Shown here: positions 13,619 through 14,307 of the stretch, one piece after another | Layout of the letters: each line of letters begins with the position of its first letter | Position numbering within the stretch: the first letter of the stretch is position 1 | Translations under genes and position numbers: made by a program | Notes under the pieces: generated by a model | What the model saw: only the letters and a program-made list of their open reading frames with translations | Database searches by the model: none | Told to the model about the DNA's origin: nothing | Assembly (NCBI GenBank): GCA_013416795.1 | Contig: RQSC01000022.1 | Coordinates: forward strand, 134,941 to 155,923 | Source of the DNA: Prasinococcaceae sp. CCMP 1430 | Taxonomy: Eukaryota; Plantae; Prasinodermophyta | Direction of reading: 5' to 3' | Length of the DNA stretch: 20,983 nucleotides

Positions 13619-14307
13619 TTAGTGCGAGCAGTCAGCGCCGCACTTGTGCGGCCCGCAGTCGGTGCACTCGCAGCTCGCCGCGCAGCCGTCGGCGCAGGTT
13701 TCGGAGCAGCTGTTGCAGCCGCACGCGGCGAGGTGGCCGTCGGCGCACTTGGGGCTGCGCGGCGCCAGCGCGCGAGGGAGGGGCGGAGCAGCGCCCACGC
13801 GGACGCGGGGTGCGGCGGCGGCATGTCAGACGCCGTTCTCGCAGCGGCGGTGAGCTGAGGACGCGCGCGGCGCCCGCGCGCGCACGCATGGTGGCGGGAT
13901 GGGCGAAGCGAGCGCGCGCGCGCGCGCCACGCACCAGGCGCAGTCGAGCGCGCAGCCGTCGGGGCAGCAGTCACAAGCTGCAGGGGCCGCGTTGCGAGAA
14001 AGGGGAGGCGCGTGCGGAGGCGCGCGAGCGCAGAGCGGCACGCGCGTTCGCGCCAGAGTCAGCGGACGGGGCAGAGGAGCGGCGCCGAGCGGGGCGGTCT
14101 CTCGCTGCTGCGCGGCCCTCACCGCATGCGACCGTCGCCTTGTGCGCCTCGTGCGCGCCGTCGTTGCAGCACTGCGAAATGCGTGTGCGGCGGTGTGCGC
14201 GCGCGTGTGGTGTTCGCGGGGGTGGGGTTGGGTGGGGGTGGGAACGAGCGCGCGGCCGAAAAAGTCAACGACCAGAGGGGTGGGTGCGAGCGGTGGGGTC
14301 CCACCAT
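13619..14307 (-). CDS. Metallothionein-like protein, 76 aa, 20 Cys, 5 His; exons 14307-14305 (ATG only, least certain), 14171-14123, 13977-13935, 13754-13619
   Basis: Spliced product is MCCNDGAHEAHKATVACACDCCPDGCALDCACPKCADGHLAACGCNSCSETCADGCAASCECTDCGPHKCGADCSH*. All three introns are GT-AG with compatible phases (0, 1, 2). It has CC, CxC and CxxC clusters, no aromatic residues, and almost only TGC codons for Cys. Confidence 0.82.

What the first reader, a model, noticed from the sequence alone, without database searches (positions are those of the whole stretch)
13619..14307. Hidden four-exon metallothionein-like gene (76 aa, 20 Cys) invisible to ORF calling
Seen: exons of 3, 49, 43 and 136 nt splice with canonical GT-AG and matching phases into a peptide that is 26% Cys, has 5 His and no aromatic residues. 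It contains two related modules, CCPDGCALDCACPKC and TCADGCAASCECTDC (C-x-DGCA-x-x-C-x-C-x-x-C), each preceded by a His-containing spacer. Established: metallothioneins are small, Cys-rich, aromatic-free metal binders, are often missed by annotation, and are poorly catalogued in microalgae. Inference: a possibly new algal MT type using mixed Cys/His ligation. The Cys pattern does not match plant MT types 1-4 as I recall them. The ATG-only first exon is the least certain part.
Basis: partly seen in the sequence, partly recalled or inferred. Interest (0 to 1): 0.8.

Follow-up and report, generated by a model that had tools for sequence, protein, structure and literature searches.

The report
Unannotated metallothionein-like gene, five exons
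A small spliced gene hidden in GC-rich algal DNA is real and conserved in ocean metagenomes, and it encodes a 104-residue, 26%-cysteine, aromatic-free protein that is most likely a new kind of metallothionein, although its first exon is missing from this assembly and metal binding is untested.

Summary
The 5' end is not. The 'ATG-only' exon (14307-14305) is AAG in two related Tara Oceans contigs and lies inside an intron.

The gene has two more upstream exons. One is in the window (14529-14498). The true first exon is absent from the window, where a 50-nt C run (14624-14673) stands in for about 220 nt. That exon is present and identical in three Tara contigs (L005, L006, L007).

The full product, read from L007, is 104 aa with 27 Cys, 5 His, no aromatic residues, pI 4.6 and no signal peptide. 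It is built from repeats of C-x-D-G-[C/H]-x3-C-x-C-x2-C, and all four splice junctions rebuild this motif.

Exons vary far less than introns among the three haplotypes (5/315 against 54/819 sites, p = 0.0003). All indels lie in introns, and no Cys or His changes.

No homologue appeared among 1.84 billion representative proteins, Pfam (including its metallothionein families), PDB, or JGI metagenome and viral contigs.

Best reading: a real, lineage-restricted, unannotated metallothionein-like metal binder. The function is inferred from composition only. There is no expression or metal-binding evidence.

The parts
14624..14673 (-). Run of 50 C (minus strand) that stands where relatives carry about 220 nt, including the true first exon (ATG + 52 nt, phase-1 donor GTGCGT). 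Either an assembly artefact or a real deletion.
   Evidence: One search gives the run coordinates. Alignments A1 and A2 show that L005 2752-2806, L006 2774-2828 and L007 1542-1488 hold the exon and the window does not.
14530..14623 (-). Retained 3' part of intron 1, with a CTGAC branch-point-like site about 40 nt before the acceptor ...GACAG.
   Evidence: Sequence read; aligned to the relatives.
14498..14529 (-). It encodes (D)GCEPSCACTK, enters in phase 1 and leaves in phase 0.
   Evidence: Identical in the window, L005 and L007. With exon 1 it forms TCADGCEPSCACTKC, a perfect copy of the module.
14172..14497 (-). Intron 2 (326 nt, GTGGGC...CGCAG).
   Evidence: 27 of 326 sites vary and there are three indels among the haplotypes. 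The ATG is AAG in L005 and L007.
14123..14171 (-). It encodes CCNDGAHEAHKATVAC plus the first base of the next codon.
   Evidence: Identical in L005. L007 has two non-synonymous changes (N to T, E to D), neither at a Cys or His.
13978..14122 (-). Intron 3 (145 nt, GTGAGG...CTGCAG).
13935..13977 (-). It encodes (A)CDCCPDGCALDCA plus two bases of the next Cys codon.
   Evidence: The only change is a synonymous GAC to GAT in L005.
13755..13934 (-). Intron 4 (180 nt, GTGCGT...GCGCAG).
13619..13754 (-). It holds 44 codons plus the stop TAA at 13621-13619, and includes the His-for-Cys module and the last full module.
   Evidence: L007 differs only in one codon (A to T).

Best explanation
This is a real five-exon protein-coding gene on the minus strand of a GC-rich marine green alga. 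Ordinary ORF calling cannot see it, because every exon is 136 nt or shorter and a spurious 556-codon antisense ORF covers the locus.

The product, read in full from a closely related ocean population, is a 104-residue acidic protein with 27 Cys, 5 His and no aromatic residues. It has no signal peptide. It arose by internal duplication of a unit of about 13 residues, C-x-D-G-[C/H]-x3-C-x-C-x2-C. Two 23-residue super-repeats lie at residues 8-30 and 71-93.

The most likely function is that of a metallothionein. The thiolates, helped by a few imidazoles, would wrap several Zn(II), Cd(II) or Cu(I) ions in metal-thiolate clusters in the cytosol, buffering or detoxifying trace metals.

What is shown: the gene structure, its conservation and the protein's composition. 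What is inferred: translation from the exon-1 ATG, cytosolic location, and every part of the metal chemistry.

In this window the start exon is missing, replaced by a 50-nt C run. The reference copy is therefore either mis-assembled there or 5'-truncated.
For: (1) Each of the four junctions rebuilds the Cys motif, and only after splicing...TCA|DGC......CACTK|CC......VAC|ACDC......DCA|CPKC.

(2) From the window alone I predicted that an upstream exon must end in phase 1, with G as its last base and a Cys two residues earlier. Exactly such an exon, beginning with ATG, was then found in L005, L006 and L007.

(3) Variable sites among the three haplotypes number 5/315 in exons against 54/819 in introns (Fisher p = 0.0003). 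All indels are in introns, all splice sites are kept, and no Cys or His changes.

(4) GC by codon position is 0.54/0.69/0.92, like the neighbouring NMO exon (0.73/0.50/0.92) and unlike the introns, which are flat.

(5) The composition meets the working definition of metallothioneins quoted in PMC7216689 (300 aa or fewer, 15-35% Cys, under 10% aromatic): 104 aa, 26% Cys, 0 aromatic, seven CxC and two CC motifs.

(6) The N-terminus MPGALIKC... has no hydrophobic leader.

(7) In one module His sits exactly where the other three modules have Cys.

(8) The antisense 556-aa ORF has no Pfam match and is frameshifted by intron indels in the relatives.
Against: There is no evidence of transcription, splicing or translation from any dataset I could reach.

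There is no homologue anywhere: 1.84 billion representatives gave only a spurious match to a bacterial Cys-containing repeat protein. Pfam found nothing at E up to 10. PDB gave nothing significant. JGI metagenome and viral contigs gave nothing. A more distant relative, L008, has no such gene after its NMO gene. Function therefore rests on composition alone.

The three haplotypes are only 3-5% apart, so there is too little divergence for a dN/dS estimate. Three of the four changed codons are non-synonymous.

An in-frame ATG lies 174-177 nt upstream of the proposed start and could add a 58-residue Arg/Pro-rich leader.

The window's own copy has no start exon.

The AlphaFold model of exon 5 is uninformative, with pLDDT 48.
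Confidence: 0.6

Rival explanations
1. The gene is real, but the protein is not a cytosolic metallothionein. Translation would start at the in-frame ATG 174-177 nt upstream. The resulting Arg/Pro/Ala-rich leader of about 58 residues would send the Cys-rich repeats to an organelle or elsewhere, where they would act as a structural zinc or disulfide module, a thiol redox buffer or a metal chaperone.
For: An in-frame upstream ATG with no intervening stop is present in L005, L006 and L007. The composition of the leader is of the kind seen in green-algal transit peptides (my own knowledge). The same genome holds many disulfide-rich Cys-repeat proteins according to earlier notes.
Against: The leader region has flat GC by codon position (0.76/0.71/0.86 and 0.78/0.69/0.75, against 0.92 at third positions in true exons). 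Between L005 and L007 it carries a -2/-1/+6 set of indels that shifts the frame locally. It varies as much as the introns do. It has no hydrophobic core, so it is not a secretory signal.
Confidence: 0.15
2. In the sequenced reference strain the gene is a 5'-truncated pseudogene. The start exon was really lost and replaced by a C homopolymer, and no protein is made from this copy. A more exotic variant is that the strain-specific ATG at 14307 rescues it, as in the reader's model.
For: The window has no exon 1 and no other in-frame ATG in the spliced message. The ATG at 14307 exists only in the window, followed by a GT in phase 0.
Against: A 50-nt homopolymer that exactly replaces a C-rich then G-rich stretch, in a draft assembly that also has a 643-N gap, looks like an assembly or sequencing failure. 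The remaining four exons are intact and nearly identical to the relatives, with no stops or frameshifts. Three independent Tara contigs carry the exon.
Confidence: 0.3
3. There is no gene. The peptide is a by-product of GC-rich, repeat-prone DNA, with splice sites picked to suit.
For: Cys-dense translations are common in this window because of simple repeats, up to 26 Cys in 44 codons. There is no homologue and no expression data.
Against: Exon-specific conservation (p = 0.0003), indels confined to introns, the motif rebuilt across four junctions, the successful blind prediction of exon 1's phase and last base, and a GC3 of 0.92.
Confidence: 0.04

Closest known systems
Metallothioneins as a functional class (working definition of Ziller and Fraissinet-Tachet 2018, as quoted in PMC7216689)
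   Same: The protein is small (104 aa), 26% Cys and free of aromatic residues. It has CxC, CC and CxxC motifs, no signal peptide and an internally repeated architecture.
   Different: It shows no sequence relationship to any curated metallothionein family. Metal binding has not been tested.
Ciliate (Tetrahymena-type) metallothioneins
   Same: These are long for the class and built by tandem duplication of short Cys modules within one polypeptide (my own knowledge; PMC7216689 notes that ciliate MTs are longer).
   Different: Ciliate modules are based on CCC and CKC-type motifs. Here the unit is C-x-D-G-C-x3-C-x-C-x2-C, with an invariant Asp-Gly. I made no direct comparison beyond the negative Pfam scan.
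His-containing zinc metallothioneins: cyanobacterial SmtA/BmtA and plant type 4 (Ec)
   Same: They use a few His alongside Cys as metal ligands (PMC7216689 for type 4; my own knowledge for SmtA). Here one module has His at a position that is Cys in its three sister modules, and the protein ends in ...C-S-H.
   Different: There is no match to Pfam Metallothio_Pro or Metallothio_PEC. The Cys spacing, the length and the number of modules all differ.
Plant metallothionein types 1-3
   Same: They occur in the green lineage and are Cys-rich with CxC motifs.
   Different: The plant types have two terminal Cys clusters separated by a long Cys-free spacer that usually holds aromatic residues (my own knowledge). 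Here Cys run through the whole chain, the only Cys-free stretch is 13 residues (32-44), and there is no Pfam Metallothio_2 match.

Membership tests
Metallothionein (working, composition-based definition) | Small protein (300 aa or fewer) | tested here: met
   104 aa from the five exons in L007.
Metallothionein (working, composition-based definition) | 15-35% cysteine, arranged in CxC, CC or CxxC motifs | tested here: met
   27 of 104 residues are Cys (26%). There are seven CxC, two CC and six CxxC motifs.
Metallothionein (working, composition-based definition) | Few (under 10%) aromatic residues | tested here: met
   No F, W or Y.
Metallothionein (working, composition-based definition) | Cytosolic, with no secretory signal | tested here: inconclusive
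   The N-terminus MPGALIKC has no hydrophobic leader. An in-frame upstream ATG cannot be formally excluded, though that region looks non-coding.
Metallothionein (working, composition-based definition) | Binds several d10 metal ions in metal-thiolate clusters | not testable with these tools
   This needs recombinant protein and ESI-MS or spectroscopy.
Curated metallothionein sequence families in Pfam-A (vertebrate, plant, Ec, prokaryotic, fungal and other MT models) | Significant match to the family profile | tested here: not met
   hmmscan of the 76-aa, 44-aa and 104-aa versions against all of Pfam-A found no families at E up to 10.
Any solved-structure family (PDB) | Sequence match to a solved chain | tested here: not met
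   The 86-aa version gave only a chance hit at E = 0.93. The 104-aa version gave nothing at E up to 10.
Secreted disulfide-rich repeat proteins | N-terminal signal peptide, or embedding in a larger extracellular protein | tested here: not met
   The true first exon starts with ATG and runs straight into Cys motifs. The stop follows 104 codons later.

The most novel reading that the evidence does not exclude
This is the founding member of a previously unseen metallothionein family with its own module (C-x-D-G-[C/H]-x3-C-x-C-x2-C) and mixed Cys/His ligation. It is carried by a marine green picoalga whose close relatives occur in several Tara Oceans samples. It would give that lineage a gene-encoded buffer for Zn, Cd or Cu that current annotations and metatranscriptome catalogues miss entirely.
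Probability: 0.5. Interest if true: 0.6.

Novelty: new variant of a known kind. Interest (0 to 1): 0.5.

Why it matters
Gene-encoded metal buffers are poorly catalogued in marine phytoplankton. The review PMC7216689 counts only a handful of annotated metallothioneins across all microalgae.

A conserved, unannotated metallothionein-like gene in an oceanic green picoalga would offer a concrete candidate for studies of Zn, Cd and Cu handling in the sea, and a new Cys/His module for metal-cluster chemistry.

It also shows a systematic blind spot. On the Tara contigs, gene callers took the meaningless antisense ORF instead (441 aa on L005, 436 aa on L007). Short-exon Cys-rich genes in GC-rich eukaryotes are therefore absent from protein catalogues with billions of entries.

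It remains a single, lineage-restricted orphan with no functional data, so the interest is moderate.

Tried and rejected

2. An alternative start exon in the window at 14793-14751 (MSFLVSWIPHGFRE, donor GTGAGG, phase 1): rejected. Its ATG is ACG in L005 and its donor is destroyed in L007.

3. Read-through of the C run as poly-Pro coding: rejected. There is no ATG in frame, and a stop lies at 14749-14747.

4. Homologue searches all came back empty:
- word-index search with the 76-aa peptide;
- exhaustive HMMER with exon 5, which gave only a spurious hit to a bacterial Cys-containing repeat protein;
- Pfam and PDB.

5. Conserved gene order in a more distant relative (L008, whose NMO is about 70% identical in DNA): no such gene lies within 3.4 kb downstream.

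6. The antisense 556-aa ORF as the real gene: rejected. It has no Pfam match and is frameshifted by indels among the haplotypes.

7. AlphaFold on exon 5 alone gave pLDDT 48, which is uninformative. I did not submit the spliced full-length protein to the restricted tools, because it is not a contiguous translation of a held sequence.

8. An exact look-up of the antisense ORFs of L005 and L006 in the cluster table failed, probably because my reference included the stop codon.

9. Literature searches found no description of such a protein.

Full report
**Observation**

With the ATG at 14307-14305 they translate to the stated 76-aa, 20-Cys peptide. The arithmetic is therefore right.

Reading further upstream, I found a third exact copy of GACGGCTGCG at 14530-14521. 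It sits in a 32-nt segment (14529-14498) bounded by AG and GT. That segment encodes (D)GCEPSCACTK and ends in phase 0. Joined directly to 14171, it gives ...CACTK-CC..., which completes the same C-x-DGC-x3-C-x-C-x2-C unit seen twice downstream.

This made the ATG-only exon suspect. It also predicted a still earlier exon that ends in phase 1, has G as its last base and has a Cys two residues before the end. Nothing in the window fits. Instead a run of 50 C lies at 14624-14673.

**Related DNA**

The neighbouring upstream gene on the same strand is a nitronate-monooxygenase gene (Pfam NMO). Searching with its first exon found a 99%-identical ORF on Tara Oceans metagenome contigs. Fetching longer contigs of that cluster gave two contigs that are 95-97% identical to the window:
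- L005 (3,678 nt), which covers window 17274 to 13835;
- L006, which ends at window 14541.

A search with the spurious antisense ORF found L007 (3,696 nt), which covers window 13207-16885 and so the whole locus.

**The missing first exon**

In all three contigs, the place of the window's C run is taken by ordinary sequence. That sequence contains ATG followed by 52 nt and the donor GTGCGT. It encodes MPGALIKCRCDACADTCA plus a final G. This is exactly the predicted phase-1 exon, and it yields TCADGCEPSCACTKC after splicing.

The complete coding sequence in L007 uses exons 1542-1488, 1318-1287, 964-916, 770-728 and 548-413. It is 315 nt long and gives 104 residues.

**Is it a gene?**

Across the window, L005 and L007:
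- 5 of 315 exon sites vary, against 54 of 819 intron sites (Fisher p = 0.0003);
- every indel is intronic;
- every splice site is kept.

The exon changes are one synonymous change (GAC to GAT) and three amino-acid changes (N32T, E37D, A100T). None touches the 27 Cys or the 5 His.

GC by codon position is 0.54/0.69/0.92. This resembles the NMO exon and differs from the flat introns.

The four copies of the module are identical at the Asp-Gly and Cys codons and differ freely in between. That pattern points to constraint on the protein rather than a DNA repeat.

The donors (GTGCGT, GTGGGC, GTGAGG, GTGCGT) and the acceptors (CAG or GCAG) look like those of the NMO introns next door.

The 556-codon ORF on the plus strand (13108-14778) has no family match, and the intron indels break it differently in the relatives. 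It is nonetheless what gene callers annotated on the Tara contigs, which explains why the true gene is not in the protein catalogues.

I put the chance that this is a real, functional coding gene in the lineage at about 0.9.

**The protein**

The protein has 104 aa, a mass of 10.3 kDa and a pI of 4.6. It contains 27 Cys (26%), 5 His and 12 Asp, and no Phe, Trp or Tyr. It has seven CxC and two CC motifs.

The architecture is as follows:
- Residues 8-30 and 71-93 form a 23-residue super-repeat, C-x-C-x2-C-x3-C-A-D-G-C-x3-C-x-C-T-x-C.
- Residues 45-63 are a shorter copy of that repeat.
- Residues 63-76 are a module in which His67 replaces the Cys that follows Asp-Gly.
- Residues 32-44 are the only Cys-free stretch and hold two His.
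- The tail is C-G-P-H-K-C-G-x-D-C-S-H.

There is no hydrophobic N-terminal segment.

An in-frame ATG lies 174-177 nt upstream and would add a 58-residue Arg/Pro-rich leader. That region has flat codon-position GC, varies as much as the introns, and carries locally frameshifting indels between L005 and L007. It is therefore probably untranslated. I keep it as a caveat.

**Function**

The protein meets every compositional criterion of the working metallothionein definition quoted in PMC7216689. It lacks the signal peptide or larger domain that would point to a secreted disulfide protein. The His-for-Cys swap at a motif position is what ligand exchange in a metal site would look like.

The most likely mechanism is therefore the formation of metal-thiolate clusters, with some imidazole ligands, around several Zn, Cd or Cu ions in the cytosol. 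This is an inference. Nothing here tests metal binding, and AlphaFold on exon 5 gave no confident fold. A low-confidence result is expected for a metal-free metallothionein, but it does not discriminate between readings.

**Comparison with known families**

No Pfam family matches, and Pfam includes its metallothionein models. No PDB sequence matches significantly.

The exhaustive HMMER scan of 1.84 billion representative proteins with exon 5 returned only a bacterial repeat protein with TDANGCTASC repeats, which is a chance likeness. JGI metagenome and viral contigs hold no relative.

A more distant relative, L008, has no such gene downstream of its NMO gene.

The gene is thus an orphan limited, as far as I could see, to one species complex. 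I did not verify the organism.

**State of the window's copy**

The assembly is a draft, with a 643-N gap at 10416-11058. The missing piece is C-rich and then G-rich. An assembly or sequencing failure therefore seems more likely than a real deletion, at roughly 0.7 to 0.3, but I cannot settle this here.

**Verdict**

This is best filed as a new sequence family within the known functional class of metallothioneins. It is of moderate interest, pending expression and metal-binding data.

Noticed in passing
window 13108-14778 (+); L005 2352-3677 (-); L007 785-2095 (+): A long stop-free antisense ORF (556 codons in the window) overlies the whole gene. It was called as a protein on the Tara contigs (441 aa on L005, 436 aa on L007). 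It has no family match and is frameshifted among the haplotypes, so it is a spurious call that masks the real gene.
   Followed up: yes
window 15154-15424: Two tandem copies, about 146 nt start-to-start and 91% identical, of an AT-rich element lie in the otherwise 70%-GC spacer between the NMO gene and this gene. L005, L006 and L007 have them too. They may be a small mobile element or a regulatory block.
   Followed up: partly
window 13308-13558: Three tandem copies of a unit of about 95 nt (82-92% identical) lie just downstream of the stop codon, in the presumed 3' UTR or flank. L007 has them too, at lower identity than the exons.
   Followed up: no
window 15657 to about 16950 (-): A nitronate monooxygenase (NMO) gene with at least two introns lies upstream on the same strand. 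Near-identical copies on many Tara and Logan contigs made the comparative analysis possible.
   Followed up: partly
window about 750-980, 2100, 5040-5160, 6400-6540, 7430-7570, 11150-11290, 11790-11990, 19500-19800, 20400-20560: Simple-sequence repeats translate into very Cys-dense peptides, up to 26 Cys in 44 codons. They cross-match the end of L002. Cys density alone is not a safe signal in this genome.
   Followed up: partly
window 10416-11058 and 11867: An assembly gap of 643 N and a single N show that the source is a draft assembly. This bears on how far to trust the C run at 14624-14673.
   Followed up: no
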